From positions 62,001 through 126,000 of IMG/VR virus record IMGVR_UViG_3300046653_000093: 64,000 bases of DNA; one strand, given 5' to 3'. The translations under genes and the position numbers were made by a program. Shown in pieces: positions 3-27,403 of the stretch. Within the stretch, counting starts at the first letter, position 1. Each line of letters starts with the position of its first letter. The notes beneath the pieces are model-generated. The model was not told the origin of the DNA. It did not search any database and worked only from the letters and a program-made list of their open reading frames with translations.

Positions 3-73
3 GCCCATGTAGTATAATGACATTACATTTCCTTGGTAAGGAAAAAAATCTGGTTTGATTCCAGCCTTGGGCT
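3..73 (+). tRNA. tRNA-Thr(GGT), slightly degenerate
   Basis: Acceptor GCCCATG/CTTGGGC (one mismatch); anticodon arm TTTCC-TTGGTAA-GGAAA; T-arm CTGG-TTTGATT-CCAG (TTT rather than TTC). Confidence 0.75.
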
Positions 74-117
74 CTAATAGTAGTTCGATTCAGAATTCAG
101 CTGATATATGCCAACGC

Positions 118-762
118 ATGAGAGCTGGATTAACATACGAAGAAGCCGGTAAACTTGGGGCAATTGCTTACGCCAAAACAGCAGCTACTCTAAAGCAACA
201 AAGAGTAGATAATTGGAACAATAATCCTAAGCTTTGTAAGGCATGTAGTAGCGCAATTCCATACGAGAAGCGTCAGAATAATTTCTGCAGCCACAAATGT
301 TCGGCAGCATTTAATAACAAGGGAATTAGAAGAAATGGTAACGCACCAATAAGCTGCCTCAACTGCGCAACTGAAACTCACAACCCAAAGTTTTGCTCTT
401 CTAATTGTGCGCTTGAATGGAATTGGAAAGAGGCAAAGCAGCATTTGATAGACACTGGAGTCGATGAATCTTGTGCTAATAAAATTGGTAAAAGATATCT
501 GATAGAATTGCACGGTAGATGCCAGCAGTGCTTGTCATCTGAGTGGCAAGGAAAAGCAATCCCGTTAGTTCTAGATCATATCAACGGAAACCCATATGAT
601 AACTCATTACCAAATCTCAGGGTAATATGTCCTAATTGCGACGCTCAAACCCCAACCTTTGCAGGAAGGAATAGAGGCAATGGTAGGTTTGAGAGAGCGA
701 AGCGTTATAAGTTTGAGAAAGATACATTTTGTGATCTAAACAGATCACAATGGAAACATTAA
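118..762 (+). CDS. HNH endonuclease with N-terminal Cys-rich zinc fingers (free-standing homing type)
   Basis: LDHINGNPYDNSLPNLRVICPNC; repeated CxxC...FCSxxC motifs; start moved to ATG 118 because the ORF-track start overlaps the tRNA. Confidence 0.85.
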   Translation: MRAGLTYEEAGKLGAIAYAKTAATLKQQRVDNWNNNPKLCKACSSAIPYEKRQNNFCSHKCSAAFNNKGIRRNGNAPISCLNCATETHNPKFCSSNCALEWNWKEAKQHLIDTGVDESCANKIGKRYLIELHGRCQQCLSSEWQGKAIPLVLDHINGNPYDNSLPNLRVICPNCDAQTPTFAGRNRGNGRFERAKRYKFEKDTFCDLNRSQWKH

Positions 763-1427
763 TTTGCATAAACCCGCATAGAAGTATGGTTTCCAAAATT
801 TCTATCGTCGGGGTTGATGATAGTGTATGTCCCGCAGATCTAGTTGATATTTCACAGACCTTTCAGTTTGTTGAGTGGGGCGTTAATCTATGCCCTGAAC
901 AAGAACAGAGGCCTGGACACCCCTCATCCGAATGGCTTGAAGAACTACTACCTTGCGCTGAAGATCTCCGATTGCGCGGAATCCTGCACGGCCGCTGGGA
1001 AAATGATGTGCTTGAAGGTGCTCCATCGCTAAAGGAGGAACGTCCAGATATCTGGGCAGCTTTTAGATGGTTGCAAGTTGACATCAGGAAAGATCCAAAG
1101 AAGATATTAACATCACTGCAACATTACCCAGATAAGATTATTCTATATACAAATCTAGAGCCAACATTTTCATCTAGGATTCTATTACCAAGAAATAAGA
1201 TATTTACATGTCTTGATTATTGTGGATACGATTTACTTGAGTCTGACCTTGATTGGTTGTGCCAAGAAACGAAGAAGTCATTTTGGGTAAGCATCGAGGG
1301 ATTTAGATCTGATGACGAGATTACCATGGACCTCTCTAGGGTAGTGAAGTTTTTGAATAGGGCAGAAGATTTTGTCACCCATGATAGTTTGGTGAAATCT
1401 CTGCGTCATAAGGGTTATCGAATATGA
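750..1427 (+). CDS. Conserved phage hypothetical protein, possibly TIM-barrel (TrpF-like)
   Basis: N-terminal GVDDSV...FQFVEWGV pattern; possible start at 786. Confidence 0.4.
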   Translation: METLICINPHRSMVSKISIVGVDDSVCPADLVDISQTFQFVEWGVNLCPEQEQRPGHPSSEWLEELLPCAEDLRLRGILHGRWENDVLEGAPSLKEERPDIWAAFRWLQVDIRKDPKKILTSLQHYPDKIILYTNLEPTFSSRILLPRNKIFTCLDYCGYDLLESDLDWLCQETKKSFWVSIEGFRSDDEITMDLSRVVKFLNRAEDFVTHDSLVKSLRHKGYRI

Positions 1428-2299
1428 TCCTGAACCACATCAAGCAAATCGCACATTCCAACTACTCCGAAGAGATTCGGCATGTAACGAAGGAAGAGGT
1501 AGCCGCCCTAAGTTCACTTGACCTATCAATGCTTCACTCAATCATGATTGGGCCGCATGTAAGTTTGGCGTTAGCGGTACTTCAGCGTATTGGTTTCTTT
1601 GAAGATCTCATCCCGGAGATTCAGGAAGGGCTTGACCTCAAGAGTTCGAAGCACTTCAAAGAAATCTGGCCGCATACGATTCAGGTAGTTGGACAAACTC
1701 CGCCGGTTATCAACATTCGCTGGGCGGCACTGTTTCACGATCTGGGTAAGGCTAAGGCATTCGATATCAAGAACAACAAGGTTACATTCCATAACCACGA
1801 ACATATCAGCGCATACATCTTCGATCAGTTTGCAAAGCGTACTGGGATTTTCAGTAACGGACAGCGAAGATCTATCCGATTCCTTGTAGCCAATTTGGGT
1901 TATGTTGAAGCGTATGATAGCTCTTGGACTGATACCGCCGTACGTAGGTTTGATAAGGAAGTTAGTATTTTTATTGATGACCTCTTGACTTTATCCGAGG
2001 CTGATATTACAACTAGCAAACCGGAAAACAGAAGGAGGATCCTTCGCAGGATTCAAGAGCTGAGAGACCGTATTGCAGATATACGAGAAAAAGACTCCAA
2101 GCAACGCCCGCTTCCAAAGGGATTGGGAAATGCTATCTCTGACAACCTAGGAATTCCGTTAGGGCCTAGAATTGGGCAGCTGATGAAAGAATTAGAGGGA
2201 AAGGTTGAGATAGGAGAAATATCGGCAAATGAAGATATCACATACTATATTGAACACCTAAGAAAGTCCCAAGTCGAGATTGCTAATACGCCAGCATAA
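1424..2299 (+). CDS. HD-domain phosphohydrolase resembling the C-terminal half of bacterial CCA-adding enzymes, without an NTase head
   Basis: HT...RWAALFHDLGK...TFHNHE...WTDTAVRRF...ADITT and a GPRIG tail; no GGxVRD or DxD motifs. Confidence 0.8.
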   Translation: MILNHIKQIAHSNYSEEIRHVTKEEVAALSSLDLSMLHSIMIGPHVSLALAVLQRIGFFEDLIPEIQEGLDLKSSKHFKEIWPHTIQVVGQTPPVINIRWAALFHDLGKAKAFDIKNNKVTFHNHEHISAYIFDQFAKRTGIFSNGQRRSIRFLVANLGYVEAYDSSWTDTAVRRFDKEVSIFIDDLLTLSEADITTSKPENRRRILRRIQELRDRIADIREKDSKQRPLPKGLGNAISDNLGIPLGPRIGQLMKELEGKVEIGEISANEDITYYIEHLRKSQVEIANTPA

Positions 2300-2304
2300 G
2301 GTGT

Positions 2305-2706
2305 ATGTCAGAAACAATCATTATCGACAATAGCTTCTTCACTTTGTCATATAACCCAGATACCAAGATCGTTCATCACGAAATAAAAGTTGCCCTCACT
2401 CACCAGGCGTTCATTAACTTGCTCACTGGTGGAGAGGCGGCTTTGAAAAGCAACCAGGCTATCAAGTGGTTGTCAGATGACCGTAAGTACAGCTCTCTAA
2501 CTGCCGAAAATATGGATTGGTCTGGCCAGTGGTTACCTGGGGCCATGGCAGAGACCGGCTGGAAATATTGGGCGAGGGTTGTTGATAAGATGCCACCAAA
2601 GCCAATTCAGGATCAATTCGTTTCCGGTTATGGCAGTTACGGTCTTGTGGCAAAGATATTCACAGATATGTCTGCGGCAATGAAGTGGCTAGAAGATCAG
2701 GTGTAA
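2305..2706 (+). CDS. STAS/SEC14 (SpoIIAA-like) domain protein
   Basis: KWLSDDR...WLPGAMAETGWKYWARV...FTDMSAAMKWL pattern. Confidence 0.6.
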   Translation: MSETIIIDNSFFTLSYNPDTKIVHHEIKVALTHQAFINLLTGGEAALKSNQAIKWLSDDRKYSSLTAENMDWSGQWLPGAMAETGWKYWARVVDKMPPKPIQDQFVSGYGSYGLVAKIFTDMSAAMKWLEDQV

Positions 2707-2838
2707 GCTACTAATACTTTGGAATAATTATCTAACCTGTCTCTTGAACACAACGATGATAGTTGGTTGGAACAGGACAAACCACTAACCATGGTTTGTG
2801 GCCATACCATAGCAGAATAATTCAGGGTGGTCATTTTT

Positions 2839-2910
2839 GCGGGCGTAGTTCAGCGGTAGAACGCGATCCTTCCAAGTTCGATGTCAGGAGTTCGATCCTC
2901 CTCGCCCGCT
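2839..2910 (+). tRNA. tRNA-Gly(TCC)
   Basis: GCGGGCG/CGCCCGC acceptor, U73, anticodon loop CTTCCAA, GTTCGATC T-loop. Confidence 0.92.
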
Positions 2911-2934
2911 CTACCAATAATCTGGAGTTCTAAC

Positions 2935-3030
2935 ATGGGTATTAAGAAACATAGAAGTATTAAGACGCATCGTGTTCCTGGTGGTGCTGGTAGTGGATCA
3001 AAAGTGATTCCAATCAAGAGAACTAGTTAA
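2935..3030 (+). CDS. Small basic peptide (31 aa, MGIKKHRSIKTHRVPGGAGSGSKVIPIKRTS)
   Basis: GGAG 7 nt upstream of the ATG; fills the spacer between two tRNAs. Confidence 0.45.
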   Translation: MGIKKHRSIKTHRVPGGAGSGSKVIPIKRTS

Positions 3031-3035
3031 TATTT

Positions 3036-3108
3036 GCGGGCGTAACTCAATTGGCAGAGTACCAGCTTCCCAAGCTGGAGGTTGAGGGTCCGATGCCCTT
3101 CGCCCGCT
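3036..3108 (+). tRNA. tRNA-Gly(CCC)
   Basis: CCAGC-TTCCCAA-GCTGG anticodon arm; atypical T-loop TCCGATG. Confidence 0.88.
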
Positions 3109-3193
3109 CTCCCACCGGCGGTGGGAACAAATGGTTCTTAAGTGAACTGTTTCTGACTGTCACGATGTGAAAGCAGCGATTGATGGTCATTTC

Positions 3194-3274
3194 GCGGGCG
3201 TAGTCTAATGGTATGACAACAGCCTTCCAAGCTGTCTCCGAAAGGAATTGAGAGTTCGAGTCTCTTCGCCCGCT
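3194..3274 (+). tRNA. tRNA-Gly(TCC) with long variable arm
   Basis: ACAGC-CTTCCAA-GCTGT anticodon arm; 14-nt variable region containing TCC-GAAA-GGA. Confidence 0.88.
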
Positions 3275-3284
3275 CTCAACCCAC

Positions 3285-3357
3285 GCGGGTAACTCCTCAA
3301 TGGTGAGGTGCCTCGTTGCCAACGAGGAAGCGGCCAGTTCGATCCTGGTTACCCGCT
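3285..3357 (+). tRNA. tRNA-Gly(GCC)
   Basis: GCGGGTA/TACCCGC acceptor; CCTCG-TTGCCAA-CGAGG anticodon arm; A at position 8. Confidence 0.88.
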
Positions 3358-3390
3358 CAAACAACACAACGCATATCCTGGAATTATACC

Positions 3391-4305: not shown

Positions 4306-4335
4306 TAGAAAAGAGGTAGTTGTTATGCTTTAGTT

Positions 4336-5746: not shown

Positions 5747-5914
5747 GTGCCCAGACATATTCAAGAAAATCAATTATTATTAGCTAAAGAGAAAGATGTA
5801 GATAGGTTAGCTCAATATTTAGGTATTGATACAACAGGTTTATCAAAAGAAGATATAGCAAGTATTGTTGCTAGAAAAATTCAATTCTATACTGAGCCTG
5901 TTAATTACTATTGA
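5747..5914 (+). CDS. Small hypothetical protein (55 aa, GTG start)
   Basis: Open frame VPRHIQENQLLLAKEKDVDRLAQYLGID... filling the gap before tRNA-Ser. Confidence 0.45.
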   Translation: MPRHIQENQLLLAKEKDVDRLAQYLGIDTTGLSKEDIASIVARKIQFYTEPVNYY

Positions 5915-5915
5915 T

Positions 5916-5998
5916 GGAAAGACAAGCCAATTGGCGATGGCATCAATTTCGAAAATTGACGAGCGCAAGCCTTGGGGATTCGAATTCCTCTCTTTCCG
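5916..5998 (+). tRNA. tRNA-Ser(CGA)
   Basis: GGAAAGA/TCTTTCC acceptor, G73, TCAAT-TTCGAAA-ATTGA anticodon arm, long variable arm. Confidence 0.88.
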
Positions 5999-6011
5999 CA
6001 AAAATTATTAT

Positions 6012-6094
6012 GGTAGGACAATCCAATTGGTGATGGAACCTGTTTTGAAAACAGTCGAGCGCAAGCCTTGGGGATTCGAATTCCTCTCCTACCG
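6012..6094 (+). tRNA. tRNA-Ser(TGA)
   Basis: GGTAGGA/TCCTACC acceptor, G73, loop TTTGAAA; 3' half nearly identical to tRNA-Ser(CGA). Confidence 0.88.
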
Positions 6095-6098
6095 CAGA

Positions 6099-6401
6099 AT
6101 GAGTAGATACACAGAAATTGCTAAGCGTCTCCAAAGCGGAGAAACTGTCACGTATAAAGAGTTCGGTAATTCAATGTTACCAAAGATGAAAAGTGGCGTG
6201 AAGGTAAGTGTCCGCCCCTGTAAATTAGAAGATTGTAATGTTGGTGATATTGTCCTATCTAAAGTACATGGAGCCCATTATTTGCACTATGTCAAGGCTG
6301 TAGCCTCTGATGGTAAGGTTCAGATTGGAAATGCCCATGGACATATTAATGGATGGACAAGAACTGTCTTTGGTAAATTAGACTCCTTTGAAAATCCATA
6401 G
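6099..6401 (+). CDS. S24/S26-family peptidase-like protein
   Basis: GNSMLP serine motif, VGDIVL and GHINGW; true start is ATG 6099. Confidence 0.7.
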   Translation: MSRYTEIAKRLQSGETVTYKEFGNSMLPKMKSGVKVSVRPCKLEDCNVGDIVLSKVHGAHYLHYVKAVASDGKVQIGNAHGHINGWTRTVFGKLDSFENP

Positions 6402-6918: not shown

Positions 6919-7003
6919 GGAGAGTCAATCCGATTGGCGACGGAACCTGCTTGGAAAGTAGACGAGCGTAACAGCCTTGTGAGTTCGAATCTCACACTCT
7001 CCG
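6919..7003 (+). tRNA. tRNA-Ser(GGA)
   Basis: GGAGAGT/ACTCTCC acceptor, G73, loop TTGGAAA, GTGAG-TTCGAAT-CTCAC T-arm. Confidence 0.9.
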
Positions 7004-7008
7004 CAAAG

Positions 7009-7455
7009 ATGAATGTTAACCAAAAAGGCGTGGTTGGTTTGGTTAAGGTAATATCCGATTTAGTAAGTAGAGGATATGAAGTATTCACGCCAATTTCTGA
7101 TTTTTGCCCAGTTGATATTATTGTGGCAGATAGTAAAATGAACCTTAGGAGGATACAGGTAAAATACCGTGAACATGACAACAGGAATAAGAATGCAATA
7201 GTTGTACAACTTGACTCAATAGTAAATGGGAAAAGAGTTCCAGTTGATGTTTCGCTAATTGATGGGTGGGCAATATATTTCCCTGAAACTAATGAAATTT
7301 ACTACGTTCCCAAAAGTGAAGTGCAGGGCAGGAGTATTTGGCTATGCATTAGGGAGTATAAATTAAGAAGAAACAAATTAGCAAGTAAGTTTCTTGATCC
7401 TGATAGAATTTTTGGAGAGGCAATCCAACAGCTGGCGATGGAATCTGGTTGCTAA
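7009..7455 (+). CDS. PD-(D/E)XK endonuclease (group I intron-associated/homing type)
   Basis: KG...DLVSRGYEVFTPISDFCPVDII...RIQVKY pattern; start at ATG 7009. Confidence 0.8.
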   Translation: MNVNQKGVVGLVKVISDLVSRGYEVFTPISDFCPVDIIVADSKMNLRRIQVKYREHDNRNKNAIVVQLDSIVNGKRVPVDVSLIDGWAIYFPETNEIYYVPKSEVQGRSIWLCIREYKLRRNKLASKFLDPDRIFGEAIQQLAMESGC

Positions 7456-7503
7456 CCAGACGAGTTCGAAAGGGCCTTGCGAGTTCGACCCTCGCCCTCT
7501 CCG
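7414..7503 (+). tRNA. tRNA-Ser(GCT)
   Basis: GGAGAGG/CCTCTCC acceptor, G73, TCTGG-TTGCTAA-CCAGA anticodon arm, long variable arm. Confidence 0.9.
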
Positions 7504-10021: not shown

Positions 10022-10522
10022 TCACCCCTGATCGTATACAGTAACATTGATACCTCTTTTCAATAACTCATTCTCAATAAGTGGCTCAATTTCTTCCCAG
10101 TTACCCTGAGCGAGCCCACACCCAATCCTGGGCATGTGTACTGCTGCGTTATACTTACTGATTTCGTCACCAGCCTTATCCAAACACTTTTGTAGGGCGC
10201 TGTAGTCAATTGGCTTAGGATTTTTTGGACCCACGATACCTTTTTGGGCGACCATATTGATCACCACAAGGTCGCTGAGAATTTGTATAATCTGGATGTC
10301 TCCGAGAAGCAATTTTCCGTAACGTTCACGCCACCACTTGCGATATTCAATCTCGACTTTTGGCCATCGCCTTGCAAGCGCTCCAGAGAAGCCCGCTCCG
10401 TATTTACCCTCATCATTGACAATCTGAATTACGTAACGGGTGTTACTTCCAAGAGGATTGGTAGCATCGCCATTCACGAACTTGAGCAGACCTTTTGGAT
10501 TATGATCACTTGGTTTTACCAT
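10022..10522 (-). CDS. Macrodomain ADP-ribose hydrolase (TARG1/Poa1p-like class)
   Basis: GDAT...IVND.G.YGAGFSGAL...MPRIGCGLAQGNW. Confidence 0.9.
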   Translation of the reverse strand: MVKPSDHNPKGLLKFVNGDATNPLGSNTRYVIQIVNDEGKYGAGFSGALARRWPKVEIEYRKWWRERYGKLLLGDIQIIQILSDLVVINMVAQKGIVGPKNPKPIDYSALQKCLDKAGDEISKYNAAVHMPRIGCGLAQGNWEEIEPLIENELLKRGINVTVYDQG

Positions 10523-14055: not shown

Positions 14056-14362
14056 CTGGTGATGGTTCTGGTCTGCGGAATATCATTGGATTCGGTGGCA
14101 ACGAAAGATATTCTGTATACAGATGTCCCCATTCAGGAACCTTAGGATGGCATTGATCATTCATTTCCTTGACTAAATCCAAAGCCGCTACAGCTGTTAT
14201 CTTAATATTCTCGGGATCATTAGATTCAATAATGATATGTAGAGCCTCTATCAAGTTAGCAATCAAAACACCACGACCATCATAGTATCTAGCCAGAGCA
14301 TTCAACCTATCATAAGATACCATTTCTTCTCTATACTTTTCAATGGTCATAATAACCATCAC
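14012..14362 (-). CDS. Hypothetical protein
   Basis: ORF in the minus-strand gene run. Confidence 0.45.
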   Translation of the reverse strand: MMVIMTIEKYREEMVSYDRLNALARYYDGRGVLIANLIEALHIIIESNDPENIKITAVAALDLVKEMNDQCHPKVPEWGHLYTEYLSLPPNPMIFRRPEPSPVDKDSLYKSLSIKE

Positions 14363-15173
14363 TTTCGAGAGCTATCTTCAAATTGCTATATAATACATCA
14401 GGATCGTTATCAGAAAGTCCCGACATTTGACCATCATTCAATTCGATAAGAATCCATTCACCAGCGGCTGTCTTTGCCACATCAATCACATAGTAATCTG
14501 GCGGCTCGCTCAGCTCTGTGTTTTGAACTTTATCGATAATAGCATTTAGGAAAGAGCGTGGTACCTCGTCCGGATTTACGTTGACACCTTCGGCTTTGAT
14601 ATCTTCAGAATGAGATGCCCAGTAGAAGCCGCCGCTGAGTATCTTATGTTTATAAATAAAGAAGCGATACTCTCTGGTAATTGGGAGTCCTTGAAGTCCT
14701 TCTGAAAGTGTCTCTAATGGCACATATTGTCGAATATATATCTTTTGGTATTGCAGCATCGAATCAGCTGTGAGGCGTCCATGAACTTCGATAGCCTCCC
14801 TCTTGTCCTTCGCGAACATATGGGTATTCCATAAGAATTTCTTCGAGTTTGTCTCGCCCTTCAGAACGAATGTCCCTTGCTCTGGAATGGTATGAAGCTC
14901 ATTCCAAGTTCGCGGCGTGAATTCTGCAAGGTCCATATACCAATTACCCAAGTCAGCAATGTATAGATGCTGCTCGTAGGTATTGATCATCTTACATCCC
15001 ACATACCCAAGATCTTTTTCTTGTTCCTTGTAGAATGGCAGAGCGGAGAATCTAGCAATCACCAAATTGTCTTTAAGTAGCATTCGGCTATCTATACAAG
15101 TGAAGTGCTTCTTTGCTACTTCTGCTTCTTGACGCCAATCTACATCATTGCGAAAGAGAATAACAGGCTTCAT
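14340..15173 (-). CDS. ATP-grasp domain protein (R2K/DUF4343-like)
   Basis: FVLKG...EYRFF...YVIDVA...WILIELNDGQMSG. Confidence 0.8.
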   Translation of the reverse strand: MKPVILFRNDVDWRQEAEVAKKHFTCIDSRMLLKDNLVIARFSALPFYKEQEKDLGYVGCKMINTYEQHLYIADLGNWYMDLAEFTPRTWNELHTIPEQGTFVLKGETNSKKFLWNTHMFAKDKREAIEVHGRLTADSMLQYQKIYIRQYVPLETLSEGLQGLPITREYRFFIYKHKILSGGFYWASHSEDIKAEGVNVNPDEVPRSFLNAIIDKVQNTELSEPPDYYVIDVAKTAAGEWILIELNDGQMSGLSDNDPDVLYSNLKIALESDGYYDH

Positions 15174-15423: not shown

Positions 15424-15427
15424 TTTG

Positions 15428-15501
15428 TCGGAGTGGTCAGATTTGAACTGACAACCTTTCGGACCCAAACCGAACGCGCTACCAAGTTACGCTACACTCC
15501 G
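15428..15501 (-). tRNA. tRNA-Pro(TGG)
   Basis: CGGAGTG/CACTCCG acceptor, A73, TTCGG-TTTGGGT-CCGAA anticodon arm, GTTCAAATC T-loop. Confidence 0.92.
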
Positions 15502-19120: not shown

Positions 19121-19969
19121 CTATGTTTTAGATTGTCTTCCAGGTCTGACACACGTTCCTTTATATGGACGCCAAGTTTTCCAAATCTTGTACAATTCAA
19201 ATTTCCTAGATAATGAGAAGTTTGAATTTTCGTATATATGATTCAAAAAAGATAAAGCGTGTCTTCCAACAAAATACACATCAGTTTTACCAACACAACT
19301 ATTTATATCATACTTATCGCAAAACTTCTCAATATCAAATCTCATAGCATCTGAATATGATGTTATCTTACATCTTGGAGATGTACATCCGAACCAAGGA
19401 TTTGTAATACTACCATCACTATCACTCAGCCCCCTAATAAAGTGCCACATTAATTCATCCGGTAGGTTTGGTAAAGATAATGAGTAGCATTTTTTACCAG
19501 GAACTATCCTAAGATGACCGCAAATATCTTCTACAATTCTTGTTGAGTTTATTTTCACAGATAGGCAGTTTTCATCAGGTACTATATTGAGTGTCGGCGC
19601 AACAAATGATCGTAGTAAATTCAAGCTCTCCACATCGTTTTTGTTGGCGTGAAGAGCAATCCGTTTGTTGTCGATGCTGCCATCACCAGCTATCAAACCT
19701 AATAGGTAAGCCTTGATTTCCGAGTCTATTTCTAAGAAACACGTTTCATTCTTTCGGTGTACAAACGCACCATTTCTTTCCCCAACATTCACCGACTTGT
19801 TATAGCAGTATGTGCAAATATCTTTATCTTGATTTTTTAATCTAGACTTTACAATCCACCTGTATCCCTTTAAATATCGACCCTTACATTTGATAGAAGA
19901 TTTTAAGTCACACTCTATCAGTACCTTAGAATTTGTATTTTTGTAACTAGATAGGTCTACAATAACCAT
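19121..19969 (-). CDS. LAGLIDADG homing endonuclease with N-terminal zinc-binding region
   Basis: AYLLGLIAGDGSI and HFIRGLSDSDGSI. Confidence 0.88.
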   Translation of the reverse strand: MVIVDLSSYKNTNSKVLIECDLKSSIKCKGRYLKGYRWIVKSRLKNQDKDICTYCYNKSVNVGERNGAFVHRKNETCFLEIDSEIKAYLLGLIAGDGSIDNKRIALHANKNDVESLNLLRSFVAPTLNIVPDENCLSVKINSTRIVEDICGHLRIVPGKKCYSLSLPNLPDELMWHFIRGLSDSDGSITNPWFGCTSPRCKITSYSDAMRFDIEKFCDKYDINSCVGKTDVYFVGRHALSFLNHIYENSNFSLSRKFELYKIWKTWRPYKGTCVRPGRQSKT

Positions 19970-21560
19970 GACATCCCTCACATTTTCCACAAAAGAAACG
20001 AAAATATTCAATTTATTGCTATCCGTAGTTACTACTAAAACACCAAGTACCATTCTACGAGTAGCTGGGGGTTATATTAGGGATAAGTTATTATGCCTAG
20101 ATTCCAATGACATAGATATTACCGTTGATAATATGACTGGCGAAGCTTTTGCCAATTTAGTCAGCAACTACATGACTGAACATGGACTCAAAAAGCAGAA
20201 CGTTACTGTTGTAGGGGCAAACCCAGATCAATCGAAACATCTAGCTACTGCTATGATCAAACTGTTCGGGCTGCCGATCGACTTCGTGAATCTGCGTACA
20301 GAGACATACGCAACAAGCCGAATCCCAACCATGAAAATGGGCACCCCCGAAGAGGATGCTCAACGTAGAGATCTTACCATCAACTCGCTGTTCTACAATA
20401 TTAATAATGGCGAAATTGAGGATTATGTAGGCGGAATCAAAGACCTTCGTGCAGGCATTGCGCGCACCCCTCTCGATCCGATGCAAACATTTCTTGACGA
20501 TCCTTTGCGCATTCTTCGAACGGTTAGGTTTGCGGCTAAGTACGGACTGGAACTTGATCCGGCTATCATTACAGCTGCTCACAAACCAGAAGTCAAAAAA
20601 TCATTCAAGAACAAGATTTCAAATGATCGCATCTGGGCTGAGCTTGCCGGCAAGAAAGAAGGCGACAAGTACAAGGCCGGTGCTCTGATTGGCCAAAACC
20701 CAACACGCGCCATCGAGCTGCTAAAAGAGCTTGGCTTGATGGAGGCGATATTTGACCCCACACCAGAAGAGGTCAAGAACCTGGCTCCGCCCCCAAAGCC
20801 GCCAGAAGACCCAAACGTCCCTGTTGAACCACCGCGCGAAGAACGAATGGTTCCATGGGAAACTCCACAGAACAACCCTCATCATCAGTTCGATATTTGG
20901 AATCATACTCTGCAAGTGGTGAAGAATCTAATTGATCAAACACCACAACCAATTCGTGAAGACCAAGAGACGTACCTTGTGCGTAACCTAGCAGCATTGC
21001 TGCATGACATAGGAAAACGATACACTGGAATTCAACGCACTTCGGAGAACGGCGGTCATACCTCATATCATGGACATGAGGAAACCTCTGCTAGATTGGC
21101 TAATGCCGTACTAAACAGATTGCGAGTTCCACAGAATATTATCAAAAGAGTTATGGATTTGATTTCTGTGCACTTGCGCCCTCATACCCTATTGGATCAG
21201 GGAAGTTCCAGGAACTATCGAAGATTCGTTCGTGATTATCCTGATTGGGAGCATAGTGTCGATCTTGCTATTGCTGACAATCTTGGGAAGCAAAACTTCA
21301 CTCAGGAACAAGTAGAAACTGAGAAACAAAAGTACGAAGACTTGCGTGGAAAAATCCAAGAATCCATGCAGTGGTCAAACCATAACCCACGACACAACCG
21401 GACTATTCCTCGTCCAATTACTGGCAATGACCTCATTGCCATTGGTATAAAGCCAGGCCAAATCATGGGTCAGATTATGGCGGCTCTCGACGAAGCCCTG
21501 CTGGACAATCCAGGTATGAGCAAAGAAGAAGCTCTTGATTTAGCAAGAACCTTTATTTGA
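19968..21560 (+). CDS. cca: Class II CCA-adding tRNA nucleotidyltransferase with C-terminal HD domain
   Basis: AGGYIRD..DIDI, DFVNLRTE, EDAQRRDLTINSL, DDPLRILR..RFA; HD motif LLHDIGK. Confidence 0.92.
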   Translation: MTSLTFSTKETKIFNLLLSVVTTKTPSTILRVAGGYIRDKLLCLDSNDIDITVDNMTGEAFANLVSNYMTEHGLKKQNVTVVGANPDQSKHLATAMIKLFGLPIDFVNLRTETYATSRIPTMKMGTPEEDAQRRDLTINSLFYNINNGEIEDYVGGIKDLRAGIARTPLDPMQTFLDDPLRILRTVRFAAKYGLELDPAIITAAHKPEVKKSFKNKISNDRIWAELAGKKEGDKYKAGALIGQNPTRAIELLKELGLMEAIFDPTPEEVKNLAPPPKPPEDPNVPVEPPREERMVPWETPQNNPHHQFDIWNHTLQVVKNLIDQTPQPIREDQETYLVRNLAALLHDIGKRYTGIQRTSENGGHTSYHGHEETSARLANAVLNRLRVPQNIIKRVMDLISVHLRPHTLLDQGSSRNYRRFVRDYPDWEHSVDLAIADNLGKQNFTQEQVETEKQKYEDLRGKIQESMQWSNHNPRHNRTIPRPITGNDLIAIGIKPGQIMGQIMAALDEALLDNPGMSKEEALDLARTFI

Positions 21561-22236: not shown

Positions 22237-23271
22237 TCATAGTATGATGCTATGTGGATGTGATTCTTTCAAGCCAGCATTGGATATTACTACAAACTCA
22301 GGATCTAATTTCAGTTCTTTAAGATTGCGCGCACCTTGATATGAGCACCCACTTCTTATACCCTCAGTAAGTTTAATAACAACGTCAGCAACTTTTCCCT
22401 TATAGGGGACAAGGGCAACAACACCCTCTATATGATTTTGTTTATGGGTAGAGCTACCCTCATACTTCTTGAATTTTGAACCTCCATCTAAGATGCCTGT
22501 GGGCCTATAACGATCATCAATAACCGAACCTGGCGCTTCATCAGTTCCAGCAAATAGATTGCCAATCATTACCAGATCTGCAAAGGCCAAAGCCTTCACA
22601 CAATCACCTGCGCTCTTGATTCCGCCATCGGCTATAAATATTGGCCATTCGCCATCGTGCTCACCATAGCAACCATTGCATACGTTGTCTAAAGCGCTGA
22701 GTTGTGGATATCCATTGCCAGTCTCAATTCTTGTTGTGCAAAGAGATCCTGGCCCAACACCAATCTTGATAATATCAGCTCCAGCACTCCACAGATGATT
22801 GGCCCCGGTCTCAGTAACCACATTACCAGCTATAATAAGAATGCTTGGATATTTGGCGCGAATATCTGCAACAAAATCATATACTTTATCATGATCTCCA
22901 TGGGCAACATCTACGCAAATTACATTGCACCCAATGTTATAGAAATCACTTACTAATACTTTATCCTCATCCTTTATACCAACTGAAACCCCAATCAACC
23001 CATCAGATACCGAGTTCCTAGCTGTATCGAAGTTCTTTAGAAGAGTTATATGGTCATCAAACCGATGAAGGATAGGGAGCCCGCCAAGATTGGCTATGGC
23101 AATTGTCATCTTAATTTCGGTAACAGTCTTCATATTTGCCGAAAGAATAGGCAACTTCAAACTATTACCTTTTGGTAACCTAACTGATAAATCTACATCA
23201 TCGCGAGATTTGAGAGAGCTGCGTTTGGGGATTAGAAGCACATCGTCAAAAGTATATCCTTGAGTGAACAT
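22237..23271 (-). CDS. IMP dehydrogenase/GMP reductase family protein (no CBS domains)
   Basis: TFDDVLLIP, DVAHG, GVGPGSLCTTR, IADGGI. Confidence 0.9.
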   Translation of the reverse strand: MFTQGYTFDDVLLIPKRSSLKSRDDVDLSVRLPKGNSLKLPILSANMKTVTEIKMTIAIANLGGLPILHRFDDHITLLKNFDTARNSVSDGLIGVSVGIKDEDKVLVSDFYNIGCNVICVDVAHGDHDKVYDFVADIRAKYPSILIIAGNVVTETGANHLWSAGADIIKIGVGPGSLCTTRIETGNGYPQLSALDNVCNGCYGEHDGEWPIFIADGGIKSAGDCVKALAFADLVMIGNLFAGTDEAPGSVIDDRYRPTGILDGGSKFKKYEGSSTHKQNHIEGVVALVPYKGKVADVVIKLTEGIRSGCSYQGARNLKELKLDPEFVVISNAGLKESHPHSIIL

Positions 23272-24011: not shown

Positions 24012-24713
24012 CTATGCCAAGGAAAGATGTGTCCGCATATTTTTTGCGGCCTCTTCGTCTGACCTAAAATTATTGATATCAAACAATATACCATTATGGT
24101 ATTCATTACCCATGGTAATATTATCTTGCCTATCATCAAAATACTTTACTTCTCTTCCCCATCCATAATTAATTAAGAAGCTCTGGAAAAACAATCTAGT
24201 TGGTTTTCTTGCCCCAACATCACAAGAGAAGTGTTGGATACACTTATTAAATATCTTGCAATTATCACGAACGAAATAAGCGTGATCTGGTCCTATATTA
24301 GATAGAAGGGCAACATCATAATTATTACCAATCAATTCTTCTACAAGATCTATCATTGGTAATGATGGTGAGAATGTTTCCATCCATCTGTCATGAATAT
24401 CCTGTAGTGTCTTATTTGATAGATGTGGATTTAGTTGATAGAAGCTTTGCTTTATATCGTATAACCCAATTTCCTGAGAGTGCTGAAAGCTGCCTCCCAT
24501 GAACTCATAAGCCAAACTGGTATTCTCAACTATATTGAGACCAATCAACAGATCTAATAGTGGGGTAAGATCAAAATGAAATAAGACATTCCCAATATCA
24601 AATGCGACCTTCCTAACCGGACTAATCTGAATGTAATCTTTCGTCAAGCTGCCTCCATTTTTGAACAGATAGAGATGGGTGGGGAGCTGAACGCTCGACC
24701 TGCCTCTTGACAA
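24012..24713 (-). CDS. HAD-superfamily phosphatase
   Basis: FDIGNVL, LLSN, RKP, FDDR..N; true start uncertain. Confidence 0.75.
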   Translation of the reverse strand: MSRGRSSVQLPTHLYLFKNGGSLTKDYIQISPVRKVAFDIGNVLFHFDLTPLLDLLIGLNIVENTSLAYEFMGGSFQHSQEIGLYDIKQSFYQLNPHLSNKTLQDIHDRWMETFSPSLPMIDLVEELIGNNYDVALLSNIGPDHAYFVRDNCKIFNKCIQHFSCDVGARKPTRLFFQSFLINYGWGREVKYFDDRQDNITMGNEYHNGILFDINNFRSDEEAAKNMRTHLSLA

Positions 24714-25473
24714 AATCCATATTCATTGATCTGCCAATATTAATCGCAACTCCATACCACTGCAACAATTGCGCATTTAGCACTTGTTCAATTTCTGATG
24801 GATTGGGACTTATAAAGAAAGACTTCCCAGAATACAAACAATCTGATACAAAGCTTGTTTCGCCTGTAGTTACCAAAGAGTTTTCAGGAATTAGTCTTTG
24901 AATATTTGATATGTCTATTTCTGATGTCAACTCTTTAGGGCTTGTAGTATATGGTCTTACCCACTCAAAGCCGCGCTTCAATAATGGCCTAGCTGAAATA
25001 TCACAGAGTGGAGAATACACTAGATAAGCGTCACCACGCGGTAGTGATTTGAGATACAGTTTCGTTGTATCCATTATCTTGGTATTCAGCTCTTTTCGTT
25101 CATGCTCAATACCAATCATCTGGAGCATTGGACTGCAATACCATAGCGGAACTTCCAATACTTTTGCAACCATCGCTGTGAAGAACTCACAATCGCTGAT
25201 CACTAATTCTGGTCCCCACTCCAATAGATCATTGATGATCATGTCTGCCATATCATGATCCACTGGTGGTCCGGCAATCCCATACTTATCTTTGAAGTAG
25301 TTCTTCTCACATCGGACAGATAGTGCATCCAAACACCAATCTATAGATTGTAGATATATACTATTTCTATAGTAAGCGGCAATGCTAACCTCATGTTCCT
25401 GAGCATGCTGAAGAAATCGAGACAACATGATATTGGAACCTATGTTATTGTTAGCTCCAAACAGAATTTTCAT
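24622..25473 (-). CDS. GT-B glycosyltransferase-like protein (MJ1255/VC2487-like)
   Basis: PELVISDCE..., TTG...SDCLYSGK...P...EQVLNA. Confidence 0.6.
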   Translation of the reverse strand: MKILFGANNNIGSNIMLSRFLQHAQEHEVSIAAYYRNSIYLQSIDWCLDALSVRCEKNYFKDKYGIAGPPVDHDMADMIINDLLEWGPELVISDCEFFTAMVAKVLEVPLWYCSPMLQMIGIEHERKELNTKIMDTTKLYLKSLPRGDAYLVYSPLCDISARPLLKRGFEWVRPYTTSPKELTSEIDISNIQRLIPENSLVTTGETSFVSDCLYSGKSFFISPNPSEIEQVLNAQLLQWYGVAINIGRSMNMDFVKRQVERSAPHPSLSVQKWRQLDERLHSD

Positions 25474-25685
25474 GCATTTCCAGTGTCATAGGCATTGAAG
25501 ATCATGTCATCTTCTATTTCTACAGAATCACCAGGACATAGCGTTCCTGCACGCTGCATATCACCAACAACTTTGCCTCTGTAAGTTACACTTATGATTC
25601 TACTGGGATTATATCCAGCACGAGAAAGTATCTCTTCATAAGTAAGTTTCAGTGGTTTTTTATTACCGTTTATTGTAATTTCCAT
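25470..25685 (-). CDS. Ubiquitin-like (multi-ubiquitin/beta-grasp) protein
   Basis: ITING...LTYEEI...SVTY...GTLCPGDSVEIEDDMIFN...TGNA. Confidence 0.65.
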   Translation of the reverse strand: MEITINGNKKPLKLTYEEILSRAGYNPSRIISVTYRGKVVGDMQRAGTLCPGDSVEIEDDMIFNAYDTGNA

Positions 25686-26065
25686 TATTCTTCCTCATTC
25701 GCAATCCAAGCTAGAACATGACCATGGCATAGCTTAGGGCTACAAAAGCAGCCGAGCACTTTAGATTTCAATTCTCTCTTAATCATAGCCATCATTTCTG
25801 GCTGTGATCGTATCCATTCCTCATATTTTTTTACGGCCTCAGCTCTTGATTCAACTTTGAATTTTGCTAAAGTACCATCTTCATGGGAGAACGGATTTCC
25901 ATATTTCGAAGGACGTCCAATATAGACATCATAAGGTTTTTTACCTTTATTAACTACTAGATGCCAAATTTTTCTAAAATCCATATCGAAGTCCCAGCCC
26001 CAAATATCTATCATATCATGATCAGATATATACAAACTTTCCTGTAACATATTATTTAAATACAC
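25685..26065 (-). CDS. DUF4326 protein
   Basis: YDVYIGRPSKYGNPF...LGCFC.P..CHGHVL. Confidence 0.85.
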   Translation of the reverse strand: MYLNNMLQESLYISDHDMIDIWGWDFDMDFRKIWHLVVNKGKKPYDVYIGRPSKYGNPFSHEDGTLAKFKVESRAEAVKKYEEWIRSQPEMMAMIKRELKSKVLGCFCSPKLCHGHVLAWIANEEE

Positions 26066-26286
26066 CTAATTTTAGACCATGTGGTCTTACGCGCATTACG
26101 CTACCCTCGGATATAACAACCAAATGATTTTTTTCTTTATAACCCTTGCCTTAGGAAGCTTGCTCTTATACAGAAAGAATAACCATTCCAACAGCTCATC
26201 ATTTGCATAGTAAGCCACATTGAATATTTTATCACTAATTCTTTCGTATTCTTTGTCAGTCATCACTATCAACTATAGTTGTCAAA

Positions 26287-26751
26287 CTACATTTTATGAG
26301 CCATCAACTCAGAGCGAATTTCCATCCACAACTTCCCCAATTGATTCCTACCATCCCTATTAGGTCCCCAGCCCCAGAAATCATCACGCCAAGAATTCTC
26401 CACAAGCTCACGATCGCCAGTAGCAAGAAGCTTGCGGCGTACATATTCATGCTGGTTGACTTTGGCGCGTAGAATATCTCGCATGATGTCAACCTTAACA
26501 AGATCCCAATCAATCAGACGTATCGCCTTATTTTTCTCAGCAATTTTGAATGCTTCGTGAGCGCTTGGGGCTGTTTGAATAGCCGCTCGTACAATGATCT
26601 CTCCTGGAAATTTCTCCCAGTGGTAAGCAGCTTCGCTAGTGTCGAATCTCAAGTTCTTCCAACTTAAAGTAAATGCCGAGAAGTTGGATAATACGTAGAA
26701 ATCTTGCTCGTAAAAGCAAATACGCTCGTCAGTATCTAGGCCGTGATTCAT
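26287..26751 (-). CDS. NADAR family protein
   Basis: LSNF...TSEAAYH..KF...LLATG..ELVE....D.FWG......NQLG.LWM..R. Confidence 0.9.
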   Translation of the reverse strand: MNHGLDTDERICFYEQDFYVLSNFSAFTLSWKNLRFDTSEAAYHWEKFPGEIIVRAAIQTAPSAHEAFKIAEKNKAIRLIDWDLVKVDIMRDILRAKVNQHEYVRRKLLATGDRELVENSWRDDFWGWGPNRDGRNQLGKLWMEIRSELMAHKM

Positions 26752-26752
26752 A

Positions 26753-27403
26753 TCAATTCCTTTCTGAGTAGGATTCACTAAATGCTGCAATGATTGGATC
26801 TTTGAGAACTGCAATAATCTTCTCGAATAATTCCTTGGTCATCTTAACGTCACCGTCAGCTCTATGGGCCGTAGCCTTAGTAATGCTGAAGTCTTTGACC
26901 AAAGCTCCGAGACCATAACGTGCTCGCTTCTTTCCAGTGCAAACATCGATCAGTCGAGCAAGCTGCATCGTATCGATGATGTATCCCTGATTGCGTCTCT
27001 TGCCTTTGCCCTCGATCCAATATCCGAATGGAAAATCGTCTTCGGAGCCGGCCTTGCGCCACAGAGCAAGAAGGAATTGATAATCGAAGTCAGGATTCTG
27101 ACCGATGAATACCCGCTCTTCCGCAGCTGCCCCATCCTCCATCAGCCACATTTCGATCTCTGGAAGAACTTCGCTTGGGAGCCTATATGTTTCCCTTCCC
27201 TTTTGAGTTTTACAAAGGATATCTTCCAGAAGATGTCCATTGACACGAAGAGCTTCATCTTCGATATTCTCCGGAGATAAAGGCTTAAGACACCAAGTCT
27301 TGCTTTCGACGTCACCTATACGCCAAAGGCAAAGTTCAATGACATCGTGTTTTTCTGGATCTGTACCTGTTGTTTCTACGTCACAGACATATTGAACATA
27401 CAT
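26753..27403 (-). CDS. DEDDh 3'-5' exonuclease 2
   Basis: DVETTG, GQNPDFD, AHRADGD. Confidence 0.88.
   Translation of the reverse strand: MYVQYVCDVETTGTDPEKHDVIELCLWRIGDVESKTWCLKPLSPENIEDEALRVNGHLLEDILCKTQKGRETYRLPSEVLPEIEMWLMEDGAAAEERVFIGQNPDFDYQFLLALWRKAGSEDDFPFGYWIEGKGKRRNQGYIIDTMQLARLIDVCTGKKRARYGLGALVKDFSITKATAHRADGDVKMTKELFEKIIAVLKDPIIAAFSESYSERN

What the first reader, a model, noticed from the sequence alone, without database searches (positions are those of the whole stretch)
3..27403. All ten tRNA genes encode C74 but not C75-A76, alongside a candidate phage tRNA 3'-end maturation/repair kit
Seen: the trinucleotide after the discriminator is CTA (Thr), CTA, CTC, CTC, CAA (Gly), CAA, CAG, CAA, CAA (Ser) and CAA (Pro), so 10/10 start with C and none is CCA. 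The window also encodes a full CCA-adding enzyme (19968), a separate HD-only CCA C-terminal half (1424) and two DEDDh exonucleases (17563, 26753). Established: RNase T (DEDDh) trimming is blocked by 3' C residues, and CCA-enzyme HD domains remove 2',3'-cyclic and terminal phosphates. Inference: trailers are trimmed to C74 and completed by the phage enzyme, and the HD proteins heal tRNA ends damaged by host defence nucleases.
Basis: partly seen in the sequence, partly recalled or inferred. Interest (0 to 1): 0.7.

Follow-up and report, generated by a model that had tools for sequence, protein, structure and literature searches.

The report
Phage tRNA genes copy host C74 rule
All tRNA genes of this 392-kb peat phage encode the first C of the CCA tail, and most lack the rest, but this is the normal tRNA gene layout of Bacteroidota and Actinomycetota and their phages, so it marks host-style tRNA processing, not a phage invention.

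Summary
The window holds ten tRNA genes: Thr, four Gly, four Ser and Pro. All ten have C at position 74 and none has CCA. Across the whole 391,957-bp phage genome, 55 of 55 tRNAs have C74 and only 9 have full CCA. A relative sharing 85% protein identity shows 14 of 14.

The pattern is not special to this phage. CCA-less tRNA genes of Bacteroidota (58 of 59 in 28 genomes) and Actinomycetota (14 of 14) follow the same rule. So do Bacteroides phage crAss001 (20 of 21), mycobacteriophage Bxz1 (26 of 26) and the 735-kb Bacteroidetes-predicted phage LR756501 (58 of 58). Cyanobacteria, Bacillota and their phages mostly use T74. Proteobacterial phages encode full CCA.

The CCA-adding enzyme and the HD-only C-terminal half are confirmed. 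A third gene, encoding only the catalytic head, lies outside the window. The two DEDDh exonucleases are not RNase T orthologues; their best matches are DnaQ/PolC proofreading domains. The genome has no RNA ligase, RtcB or RNase Z.

Best reading: the phage pre-tRNAs follow the host's processing route to an N73-C74 end, and CA is then added, helped by the phage enzyme. The trimming and repair kit is only partly supported.

The parts
3..74 (+). tRNA-Thr(GGU) 3-73 plus templated C74; positions 74-76 are CTA
1424..2299 (+). 291-aa protein equal to the C-terminal (body/tail plus HDIG) half of a CCA-adding enzyme, with no catalytic head
   Evidence: Pfam HD. TIGR02692 positions 197-457 and HDIG. PDB 3wfo, Aquifex CC-adding enzyme residues 307-502, E 1e-11, with the HDLGK motif aligned. 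25% identical to the C-half of the full enzyme.
2839..2911 (+). tRNA-Gly(UCC) 2839-2910 plus C74; CTA
3036..3109 (+). tRNA-Gly(CCC) 3036-3108 plus C74; CTC
3194..3275 (+). tRNA-Gly(UCC), 81 nt, with an extra 3-bp hairpin in the variable region, plus C74; CTC
3285..3358 (+). tRNA-Gly(GCC) 3285-3357 plus C74; CAA
5916..5999 (+). tRNA-Ser(CGA) 5916-5998 plus C74; CAA
6012..6095 (+). tRNA-Ser(UGA) 6012-6094 plus C74; CAG
6919..7004 (+). tRNA-Ser(GGA) 6919-7003 plus C74; CAA
7414..7504 (+). tRNA-Ser(GCU) 7414-7503 plus C74; CAA. ARAGORN's start is 2 nt off; I set the register from the alignment and the sequence.
15427..15501 (-). tRNA-Pro(UGG) 15501-15428 plus C74 at 15427; CAA
17563..18255 (-). 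DEDDh 3'-5' exonuclease 1 (230 aa), generic DnaQ/PolC-exo type. Its link to tRNA processing is not supported.
19968..21560 (+). Class II CCA-type tRNA nucleotidyltransferase with a C-terminal HD domain (530 aa). Motifs A (GGyiRD..DiD), B (RRD) and D (DDPlR) are intact.
26753..27403 (-). DEDDh 3'-5' exonuclease 2 (216 aa), a 28% identical paralogue of exonuclease 1. It lies directly upstream of NADAR (26287-26814) and DUF4326 (25685-26065).

Best explanation
The phage's tRNA genes are written in the 3'-end 'grammar' of its host lineage. That grammar is: discriminator, an invariant templated C74, then a non-C base at position 75 and an A-rich trailer, with full CCA kept in only a minority of genes. 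The same layout is seen across Bacteroidota and Actinomycetota and in phages that infect them. It differs from the U74 layout of Cyanobacteria and Bacillota, which matches the RNase Z cut after the discriminator described for B. subtilis (PMC1874595). It also differs from the all-CCA layout of Proteobacteria.

The proposed pathway has three steps.
1. Host RNase P and host 3' nucleases process the polycistronic phage transcripts to tRNA-N73-C74-OH. Where two tRNAs abut, the RNase P cut at the 5' end of the downstream tRNA leaves exactly this end.
2. C74 stays in the mature tRNA and serves as the primer end.
3. A CCA-adding enzyme adds C75 and A76. The host must have such an enzyme. The phage adds its own full-length copy, probably to secure capacity for the 46 of 55 phage tRNAs that need it and to re-add lost CCA ends.

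Shown here: C74 invariance and its selection, the matching host and phage distribution, the one-nucleotide spacers, and the intact transferase and HD motifs. Inferred: which nucleases make the C74 end, why C74 is kept (RNase P L15 pairing, a stop or anti-determinant for 3' nucleases, or both), and the division of labour between host and phage enzymes. The host is probably a Bacteroidota member, but this is not established.
For: C74 is present in 55/55 tRNAs of this genome and 14/14 in a relative with 85% protein identity. Positions 75-76 differ between orthologous tRNAs of the two phages, while C74 does not.

Bacteria:
- 28 genomes drawn across the phylum of a Flavobacterium gave 62 tRNAs, 3 with CCA, and 58/59 CCA-less genes with C74. 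The one exception is a tRNA-His register shift.
- Named Bacteroidota: 10/10, 6/6 and 8/8.
- Actinomycetota: 14/14 and 7/7.
- Prochlorococcus: 7/7 T74. Bacillota CCA-less genes: 27 T, 7 C, 2 A.

Phages of known or predicted host:
- crAss001 (Bacteroides) 20/21 C74; Bxz1 (Mycobacterium) 26/26 C74.
- Cyanophage B23 17/18 T74; cyanophage S-CRM01 22 T, 12 C, 1 A; Lactobacillus phage LP65 9 T, 3 A, 1 C.
- T5, KVP40 and XacN1: 77/77 full CCA. LR756501: 58/58 C74, and that phage is predicted to infect Bacteroidetes (PMC7162821).

The trailer profile (C74 at 1.00, C depleted at 75, A-rich at 76-78) is the same in this phage, LR756501 and Bacteroidota. Three tRNA pairs are separated by C74 alone and none by zero nucleotides. 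T4 tRNA-Gln/Leu has the same junction.

The transferase has intact motifs A, B and D and no loop deletion relative to eukaryote-type CCA enzymes. [quoted passage not shown] The CCA-adding enzyme is essential in mycobacteria, where about two thirds of tRNA genes lack CCA (PMC11541572).
Against: - The host is not identified. Tests by tRNA identity, GMP reductase identity, terminase similarity and Shine-Dalgarno use were uninformative.
- No mature 3' ends were observed. The one metatranscriptome holding the region shows only contigs that read through a tRNA-Ser gene.
- CCA-type transferases also occur in phages whose hosts template CCA, for example Vibrio phages. The phage enzyme therefore need not exist because of the C74 layout.
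- The bacterial samples are tens of tRNAs per phylum, not a census.
- S-CRM01 and Bacillus phage G are mixed, so host tracking is a strong tendency and not a law.
Confidence: 0.7

Rival explanations
1. This is a phage-autonomous maturation and repair kit: the two phage DEDDh exonucleases trim trailers RNase T-style until blocked by C74, the phage CCA enzyme completes the end, and the HD domains heal ends left with phosphate or cyclic phosphate by host defence nucleases.
For: Both exonucleases carry intact DEDDh motifs, and exonuclease 1 has a weak RNase T match in the PDB (E 3e-3). The HD/HDIG motifs are intact in both HD proteins. The HD domain of E. coli CCA-adding enzyme has phosphatase and 2',3'-cyclic phosphodiesterase activity (my knowledge, not checked here). 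Defences that cut tRNA CCA tails exist, and about 45% of Cas12a3 homologues are found in Bacteroidota (PMC13594972).
Against: RNase T equivalog scores are 26 and 21 bits against a cut-off of 246. The best families are the DnaQ/PolC exonuclease group and PHROG 'DNA polymerase exonuclease subunit', and the best PDB match is a PolC exonuclease. Exonuclease 2 sits beside NADAR and DUF4326 genes. crAss001, Bxz1 and whole bacterial phyla show the same C74 rule, so no phage-specific kit is needed to explain it. The genome has no RtcB, no PF09414 RNA ligase and no RNase Z. The four genes are scattered among unrelated genes.
Confidence: 0.12
2. C74 is kept mainly for RNase P. Before CCA is completed, the single templated C pairs with the 3'-proximal G of the L15 GG motif of RNase P RNA and supports accurate 5' cleavage. 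Its role as a 3'-processing stop is secondary. This is a sub-mechanism compatible with the best explanation.
For: G293-C74 and G292-C75 pairing is established for E. coli RNase P, and C259-G74 rescue for the B. subtilis enzyme. A G74 substrate is cleaved more than 100-fold more slowly (PMC1874595). This would explain why position 74 is fixed while 75 and 76 drift.
Against: C75 pairs as well, yet it is depleted. Cyanobacteria and Bacillota manage with U74. I did not examine the L15 sequences of RNase P RNA in C74-type phyla.
Confidence: 0.3
3. The phage runs two transferases with divided tasks: the full-length enzyme, and a split one made of the head-only protein (genome 372503-373246) plus the HD half (window 1424-2299). 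For example, one adds C75 and the other A76, and neither adds C74, which must therefore be templated.
For: The genome has two PolyA_pol heads. The head-only protein covers TIGR02692 positions 22-234 and the HD half covers 197-457, so the two are complementary. Their best PDB matches are the Aquifex A-adding enzyme and the Aquifex CC-adding enzyme respectively. A PHROG family of about 245-aa head-only transferases exists.
Against: The full-length enzyme has everything a complete CCA-adding enzyme needs. LR756501 has one head only and still shows 58/58 C74. The two halves are encoded about 150 kb apart. The C74 rule also exists in bacteria, where it needs no such arrangement.
Confidence: 0.1
4. 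The C74 pattern is a detection or register artefact, or a chance effect of base composition.
For: ARAGORN extends its reported 3' end through any C, CC or CCA, so its coordinates alone could mislead.
Against: Rfam hits end at the discriminator and agree with my register. The register was set by acceptor-stem pairing. The same pipeline returns T74 in Prochlorococcus, Bacillota and cyanophages. The chance probability is 3e-36.
Confidence: 0.01

Closest known systems
CCA-less tRNA genes of Bacteroidota and Actinomycetota and the essential host CCA-adding enzyme (e.g. mycobacterial PcnA)
   Same: The layout is the same: invariant templated C74, untemplated CA, and a minority of genes with full CCA. 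These lineages depend on a CCA-adding enzyme (PMC5143459; PMC11541572).
   Different: Here the genes sit in a virus that also brings its own transferase. I found no paper in the searchable library that states the C74 rule explicitly.
Bacteroides phage crAss001 and Mycobacterium phage Bxz1 tRNA sets
   Same: Both are phage tRNA arrays with C74 in nearly all CCA-less genes: 20/21 and 26/26. The crAss001 trinucleotide spectrum (CTA, CAA, CAT, CTT) is the closest to this phage's.
   Different: They are much smaller phages of known hosts. I did not examine whether they encode a CCA-adding enzyme.
Uncultured 735-kb huge phage LR756501 (Mahaphage clade, predicted Bacteroidetes host)
   Same: 58/58 C74 with 7 CCA. 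It gives the best phage match to the CCA enzyme (32.5% identity) and has the same trailer profile.
   Different: It has only one PolyA_pol head. The terminase of this phage gave no close match to any phage record, LR756501 included.
Phage T4 tRNA-Gln/Leu and tRNA-Pro/Ser dimeric precursors
   Same: T4 tRNA-Gln is followed by a single C and then tRNA-Leu +1. T4 tRNA-Pro is followed by C-U and then tRNA-Ser. This matches the three one-nucleotide junctions here. That host nucleotidyltransferase then completes the CCA is classical T4 work recalled from memory, not re-read here.
   Different: In T4 this applies to 2 of 8 genes. T4 Ser (UAA) and Ile (UAU) lack C74, and T4 carries no CCA enzyme but does carry an RNA ligase and a kinase-phosphatase (the last clause from memory).
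Aquifex-type CC-adding and A-adding enzyme pair; E. coli multifunctional CCA enzyme with HD domain
   Same: The HD-bearing C-terminal regions match the Aquifex CC-adding enzyme. The head-only protein matches the Aquifex A-adding enzyme best.
   Different: The full-length phage enzyme's catalytic half is far closer to eukaryote-type CCA enzymes (PDB 9kma, E 2e-63). No activity data exist. The possible second enzyme would be split into two distant genes.

Membership tests
Class II CCA-adding enzyme (tRNA nucleotidyltransferase) | PolyA_pol head domain with motif A (GGxxRD...DxD) | tested here: met
   PF01743 at 92.6 bits. 'GGyiRDkllcldsnDiDi' aligns to PDB 9kma and 9ns4.
Class II CCA-adding enzyme (tRNA nucleotidyltransferase) | Motif B (RRD) and motif D ((E/D)DxxR templating residues) | tested here: met
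   'daqRRDltiN' and 'flDDPlRilR' are aligned without gaps.
Class II CCA-adding enzyme (tRNA nucleotidyltransferase) | Flexible loop between motifs A and B retained (its deletion marks CC-only enzymes) | tested here: inconclusive
   The alignment to eukaryote-type CCA enzymes across this stretch has only a one-residue gap. No CC-adding reference was aligned position by position.
Class II CCA-adding enzyme (tRNA nucleotidyltransferase) | Scores above a curated equivalog cut-off | tested here: not met
   The best is TIGR02692 at 171 bits against a cut-off of 438.8. It is a divergent member, so the family call rests on the motifs.
Class II CCA-adding enzyme (tRNA nucleotidyltransferase) | Adds C75 and A76 (and C74) to tRNA without a template | not testable with these tools
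   Needs an enzyme assay.
RNase T | DEDDh exonuclease fold and motifs | tested here: met
   PF00929 at 46.7 and 45.9 bits. The DxE, (H/Q)NxxFD and Hx4D motifs are visible in the pairwise alignment.
RNase T | Matches the RNase T equivalog model (TIGR01298) | tested here: not met
   26 and 21 bits against a cut-off of 246.2. The DnaQ/PolC-exo families and phrog_192 score higher. The best PDB match is PolC exonuclease 2p1j.
RNase T | Trims tRNA 3' trailers and is blocked by a 3' C | not testable with these tools
   Needs an enzyme assay.
HD-domain phosphohydrolase of CCA-enzyme type | H...HD...D metal-binding motif within a CCA-enzyme C-terminal region | tested here: met
   PF01966 and TIGR00277 HDIG. 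'alfHDlGK' and 'fhnHehi' align to 3wfo. TIGR02692 positions 197-457.
HD-domain phosphohydrolase of CCA-enzyme type | Removes 2',3'-cyclic or terminal phosphate from tRNA ends | not testable with these tools
   Needs an enzyme assay.
C74-templated CCA-less tRNA gene layout (Bacteroidota/Actinomycetota type) | C at position 74 in essentially all tRNA genes | tested here: met
   55/55, compared with 58/59 and 14/14 in the bacterial samples.
C74-templated CCA-less tRNA gene layout (Bacteroidota/Actinomycetota type) | CA not templated in most genes; C depleted at 75; A-rich trailer (Bacteroidota form) | tested here: met
   46/55 genes are CCA-less. The profile is C 0.10 at position 75 and A about 0.5 at 76-77, matching the Bacteroidota sample.
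T4-type tRNA break repair (kinase-phosphatase plus RNA ligase) or RtcB repair | An RNA ligase or RtcB gene is present | tested here: not met
   No PF09414 and no PF01139 match in the 91%-complete genome.
RNase Z-dependent CCA-less tRNA processing | U (or non-C) at position 74, and a phage or host RNase Z | tested here: not met
   There is no non-C at position 74. The only MBL-fold gene in the genome is an Apyc1 homologue, not RNase Z.

The most novel reading that the evidence does not exclude
Position 74 of tRNA genes may be a phylum-level processing code: C74 in Bacteroidota, Actinomycetota and most Chloroflexota, U74 in Cyanobacteria and Bacillota, full CCA in Proteobacteria. Phage tRNA genes copy it closely enough that it could predict the host phylum of uncultivated huge phages. 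It would also mark a third bacterial route of tRNA 3' maturation that ends at C74, which I did not find described in the open literature. In addition, this phage may carry a second transferase split into a head-only gene and an HD-half gene.
Probability: 0.3. Interest if true: 0.55.

Novelty: new member of a known kind. Interest (0 to 1): 0.4.

Why it matters
For this phage, the finding reduces to an ordinary host-adapted trait plus a known class of accessory gene; CCA-adding enzymes in jumbo phages are already noted in PMC7824862. The wider pattern is the useful part. The base after the discriminator separates bacterial lineages into C74, U74 and CCA types, and phage tRNA arrays follow their hosts. 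That gives a cheap, sequence-only clue to the host lineage of uncultivated tRNA-rich phages. Here it points to a C74-type host, probably Bacteroidota, in peat. It also points to a 3'-maturation route ending at C74 that I did not find described in the open literature.

Tried and rejected
- Host identification failed by every route tried. GMP reductase tblastn gave 37-46% identity for the main matches in Bacteroidota and in the other genomes tried. Phage tRNA identity to tRNAs of six phyla was flat at 0.63-0.69. The terminase has no close phage relative, and another structural-region ORF has no phage match at all. Shine-Dalgarno use is moderate. The Bacteroidota -7 motif TAnnTTTG occurs 413 times against 310 expected, which is only a weak hint.
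- The blastn search with the CCA gene found nothing.
- The metatranscriptome run X18 gave only contigs that read through tRNA-Ser(UGA) with its flanks, and nothing on mature ends.
- Complex prediction on the head-only protein with the HD half gave no verdict, so it counts neither for nor against binding.
- 'Phylum of G041', whose record is labelled Acidobacteria, drew the same genomes as the Actinomycetota centre. No separate Acidobacteriota sample was therefore obtained.
- ORF 750-1427, whose stop overlaps the start codon of the HD half, has no Pfam, NCBIfam or PHROG match and only a weak TIM-barrel / AP-endonuclease-2-like lead.
- A GATATATG-like word seen near several tRNAs is not enriched genome-wide.
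- Literature searches for an explicit description of the C74 rule found none. The library covers open-access papers only.

Full report
**What is in the window.** The window is bases 219445-283444 of a single 391,957-bp virus contig with 43% G+C, rated 91% complete. The same sequence occurs in peat and permafrost metagenomes. Default ARAGORN and Rfam at gathering score report six tRNAs in the window. Relaxed ARAGORN adds four class-II tRNA-Ser genes at 5916, 6012, 6919 and 7414, and Rfam supports two of them weakly. Their acceptor stems differ by compensatory changes, all have discriminator G, and they carry the four Ser anticodons that the genome otherwise lacks.

I set the register by acceptor-stem pairing and checked it against Rfam coordinates, which end at the discriminator. 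On that basis all 51 default ARAGORN tRNAs plus the four Ser genes have C at position 74. That is 55 of 55, with probability 3e-36 from base composition. Position 75 is T in 26, C in 13, A in 10 and G in 2 of the 51. Position 76 is A in 32 of the 51. Nine genes template full CCA, including both tRNA-Met genes, so 'none is CCA' is true only of the window. A relative whose HD protein is 85% identical has C74 in 14 of 14 tRNAs, while positions 75-76 differ between orthologues: Thr-CGU is CAA here and CTA there, and Gly-GCC is CAA here and CCC there. Selection therefore acts on C74 itself. Three tRNA pairs (genome 186665/7, 193661/3, 196517/9) are separated by that single C, and no pair is separated by zero nucleotides. 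In those cases the RNase P cut at the downstream 5' end would leave N73-C74-OH, which argues that C74 is kept in the mature tRNA.

**The same pattern occurs elsewhere.** I ran the same pipeline on other phages and on sampled bacterial genomes.

| Source | Host or phylum | tRNAs | Full CCA | Position 74 in CCA-less genes |
|---|---|---|---|---|
| T5, XacN1, KVP40 | Proteobacteria | 77 | 77 | none are CCA-less |
| T4 | Proteobacteria | 8 | 4 | Gln and Pro C; Ser U (UAA); Ile U (UAU) |
| LR756501 (735 kb) | Bacteroidetes (predicted) | 58 | 7 | 51/51 C |
| crAss001 | Bacteroides | 23 | 2 | 20/21 C |
| Bxz1 | Mycobacterium | 31 | 5 | 26/26 C |
| Cyanophage B23 | Synechococcus | 18 | 0 | 17 T, 1 A |
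| Cyanophage S-CRM01 | Synechococcus | 36 | 1 | 22 T, 12 C, 1 A |
| LP65 | Lactobacillus | 13 | 0 | 9 T, 3 A, 1 C |
| Bacillus phage G | Bacillus | 16 | 10 | 3 C, 2 T, 1 A |
| 28 genomes across the phylum of a Flavobacterium | Bacteroidota | 62 | 3 | 58/59 C |
| Phylum of Janibacter | Actinomycetota | 26 | 12 | 14/14 C |
| Anaerolineales genome | Chloroflexota | 11 | 0 | 9/11 C |
| Prochlorococcus | Cyanobacteriota | 8 | 1 | 7/7 T |
| Loci from 22 genomes | Bacillota | 125 | 89 | 27 T, 7 C, 2 A |

- In T4, tRNA-Gln is followed by one C and then tRNA-Leu, and tRNA-Pro by C-U and then tRNA-Ser.
- LR756501 gives the best phage match to the CCA enzyme, at 32.5% identity. Genomes over 634 kb from that study were all predicted to replicate in Bacteroidetes (PMC7162821).
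- The single Bacteroidota exception is a tRNA-His register shift caused by G-1.
- Named Flavobacterium, Bacteroides and seven other Bacteroidota genera agree with the phylum sample. The Janibacter genome itself adds a further 7/7.

The trailer profile is the same in this phage, LR756501 and Bacteroidota: C74 at 1.00, C depleted at position 75, A-rich at 76-78. The C74 rule is therefore a lineage-wide way of writing tRNA genes that phages copy from their hosts. It is not a device of this phage. Published surveys say that Bacteroidetes mostly do not template CCA (PMC5143459), and that about two thirds of mycobacterial tRNA genes lack CCA and depend on an essential CCA-adding enzyme (PMC11541572). 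I found no paper in the searchable library that states the C74 rule itself.

**The proteins.**

- ORF 19968-21560 is a class II nucleotidyltransferase. It has a PolyA_pol head, motifs A, B and D intact, and a C-terminal HD domain.
  - Its catalytic half is closest to eukaryote-type CCA enzymes in the PDB (9kma, E 2e-63; S. pombe Cca2 and Cca1).
  - Its HD region is closest to the Aquifex CC-adding enzyme.
  - It stays below every curated equivalog cut-off.
  - A public gene call starts it at Met56, which would delete motif A. The longer frame is the credible one.
- ORF 1424-2299 is the C-terminal half of such an enzyme. It covers TIGR02692 positions 197-457, has an intact HDIG motif, and has no head.
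- A scan of the whole genome found a second head at genome 372503-373246. It is a 247-aa head-plus-neck protein covering TIGR02692 positions 22-234, with intact motif A and a variant motif B (SRD in place of RRD). Its best PDB match is the Aquifex A-adding enzyme. A PHROG family of about 245 positions matches it.
  - The head-only and HD-half proteins are complementary on the model, so a split second transferase is possible.
  - That remains unproven. The complex prediction gave no verdict, and LR756501 has one head only.
- The two DEDDh exonucleases are the only ones in the genome and are 28% identical to each other.
  - They score 26 and 21 bits on the RNase T equivalog, whose cut-off is 246.
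  - DnaQ/PolC-exo families and the PHROG 'DNA polymerase exonuclease subunit' score higher.
  - The best PDB match of both is a PolC exonuclease domain.
  - Exonuclease 2 lies next to NADAR and DUF4326 genes, and a Macro-domain gene lies at 10022-10522. These are ADP-ribose-related domains, so this is not an RNA-processing setting.
- The genome has no RtcB and no PF09414 RNA ligase. Its only metallo-beta-lactamase-fold gene is an Apyc1 (anti-Pycsar) homologue and not RNase Z.

**How it most likely works.** Polycistronic phage tRNA transcripts are cut by host RNase P and trimmed or cut at the 3' side by host enzymes to N73-C74-OH. C74 remains, and a CCA-adding enzyme supplies C75 and A76.
- The host must already have that enzyme. 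The phage copy plausibly secures capacity for the 46 of 55 phage tRNAs that need it, and can re-add CCA ends lost to turnover or to defences that clip tRNA tails, such as Cas12a3, which is common in Bacteroidota (PMC13594972).
- The reason C74 is fixed is inferred, not shown. It may pair with the L15 GG motif of RNase P RNA before CCA is complete (PMC1874595). It may stop or repel 3' nucleases. Both could be true.
- The steps shown here are the sequence pattern, its selection, its host-linked distribution, the one-nucleotide junctions and the intact enzyme motifs. All enzymology is inferred.

**Verdict.** The need for CA addition and the presence of CCA-type and HD proteins are right. The RNase T-like trimming role of the exonucleases is not supported. 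The repair role is untested. The main explanation, host-lineage grammar, was missed. For the phage this is a new member of a known kind. The wider position-74 code and its value as a host clue are the more interesting lead, and they need a full census.

Noticed in passing
genome 210332-210422 (about 9 kb upstream of the window; outside it): A 91-nt tRNA with anticodon CUA (an amber suppressor, which ARAGORN labels 'Pyl'), also with C74. ARAGORN also labels two adjacent tRNAs with anticodon CUA in LR756501. TAG still ends 43 of 276 long ORFs here, so I did not assume any change of genetic code.
   Followed up: partly
genome 117243-117590, minus strand (outside the window): A phage-encoded tmRNA with tag peptide ANDNAYAAAA.
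   Followed up: no
genome 165351-166229 (L218:552-1430:+; outside the window): A 292-aa metallo-beta-lactamase-fold protein that matches Apyc1, the anti-Pycsar cyclic-nucleotide nuclease (PDB 7u2s, E 3e-30). It is a likely counter-defence gene and not RNase Z.
   Followed up: yes
genome 372503-373246, minus strand (L020:1004-1747:-; outside the window): A second CCA-type nucleotidyltransferase consisting of head and neck only (247 aa). On the family model it is complementary to the HD-only half at window 1424-2299.
   Followed up: partly
window 55-762 (+) and 19121-20053 (-): Two homing-endonuclease-like ORFs. An HNH type starts inside the 3' end of tRNA-Thr. A LAGLIDADG type overlaps the 5' end of the CCA-enzyme gene head to head by 86 bp.
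   Followed up: no
window 19968-20132: A public protein record starts the CCA enzyme at Met56. That would remove catalytic motif A (residues 31-55), so it looks like a gene-calling error caused by the overlapping ORF on the opposite strand.
   Followed up: yes
window 19968-20750: The catalytic half of the phage CCA enzyme is much closer to eukaryote-type CCA enzymes in the PDB (9kma at 218 bits; S. pombe Cca2 and Cca1) than to the solved bacterial ones (68 bits or less). I did not test whether this reflects origin or only which structures have been solved.
   Followed up: no
window 3194-3274: A second tRNA-Gly(UCC) of 81 nt with an extra 3-bp hairpin (UCC-GAAA-GGA) in the variable region, which is unusual for tRNA-Gly.
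   Followed up: partly
window 5865-6401 and 6934-7455: Two ORFs of 178 and 173 aa overlap the tRNA-Ser genes on the same strand, so they may be spurious. The Ser genes are missed by default tRNA finders.
   Followed up: partly
window 10022-10522, 25685-26065, 26287-26814: Macro, DUF4326 and NADAR domain genes. All three are ADP-ribose-related domains, and two of the genes lie next to DEDDh exonuclease 2.
   Followed up: no
window 750-1427: A 225-aa ORF whose stop overlaps the start of the HD-half gene. It has no family match and only a weak TIM-barrel / AP-endonuclease-2-like lead (feature score 0.79, structure TM 0.64 on a low-confidence model).
   Followed up: partly
window 22237-23271 (-), 14340-15173 (-), 40867-42636 (-): A GMP reductase/IMPDH-family gene (E 5e-91), an R2K-clade ATP-grasp gene, and a terminase large subunit with no close relative among 50,697 phage records.
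   Followed up: no
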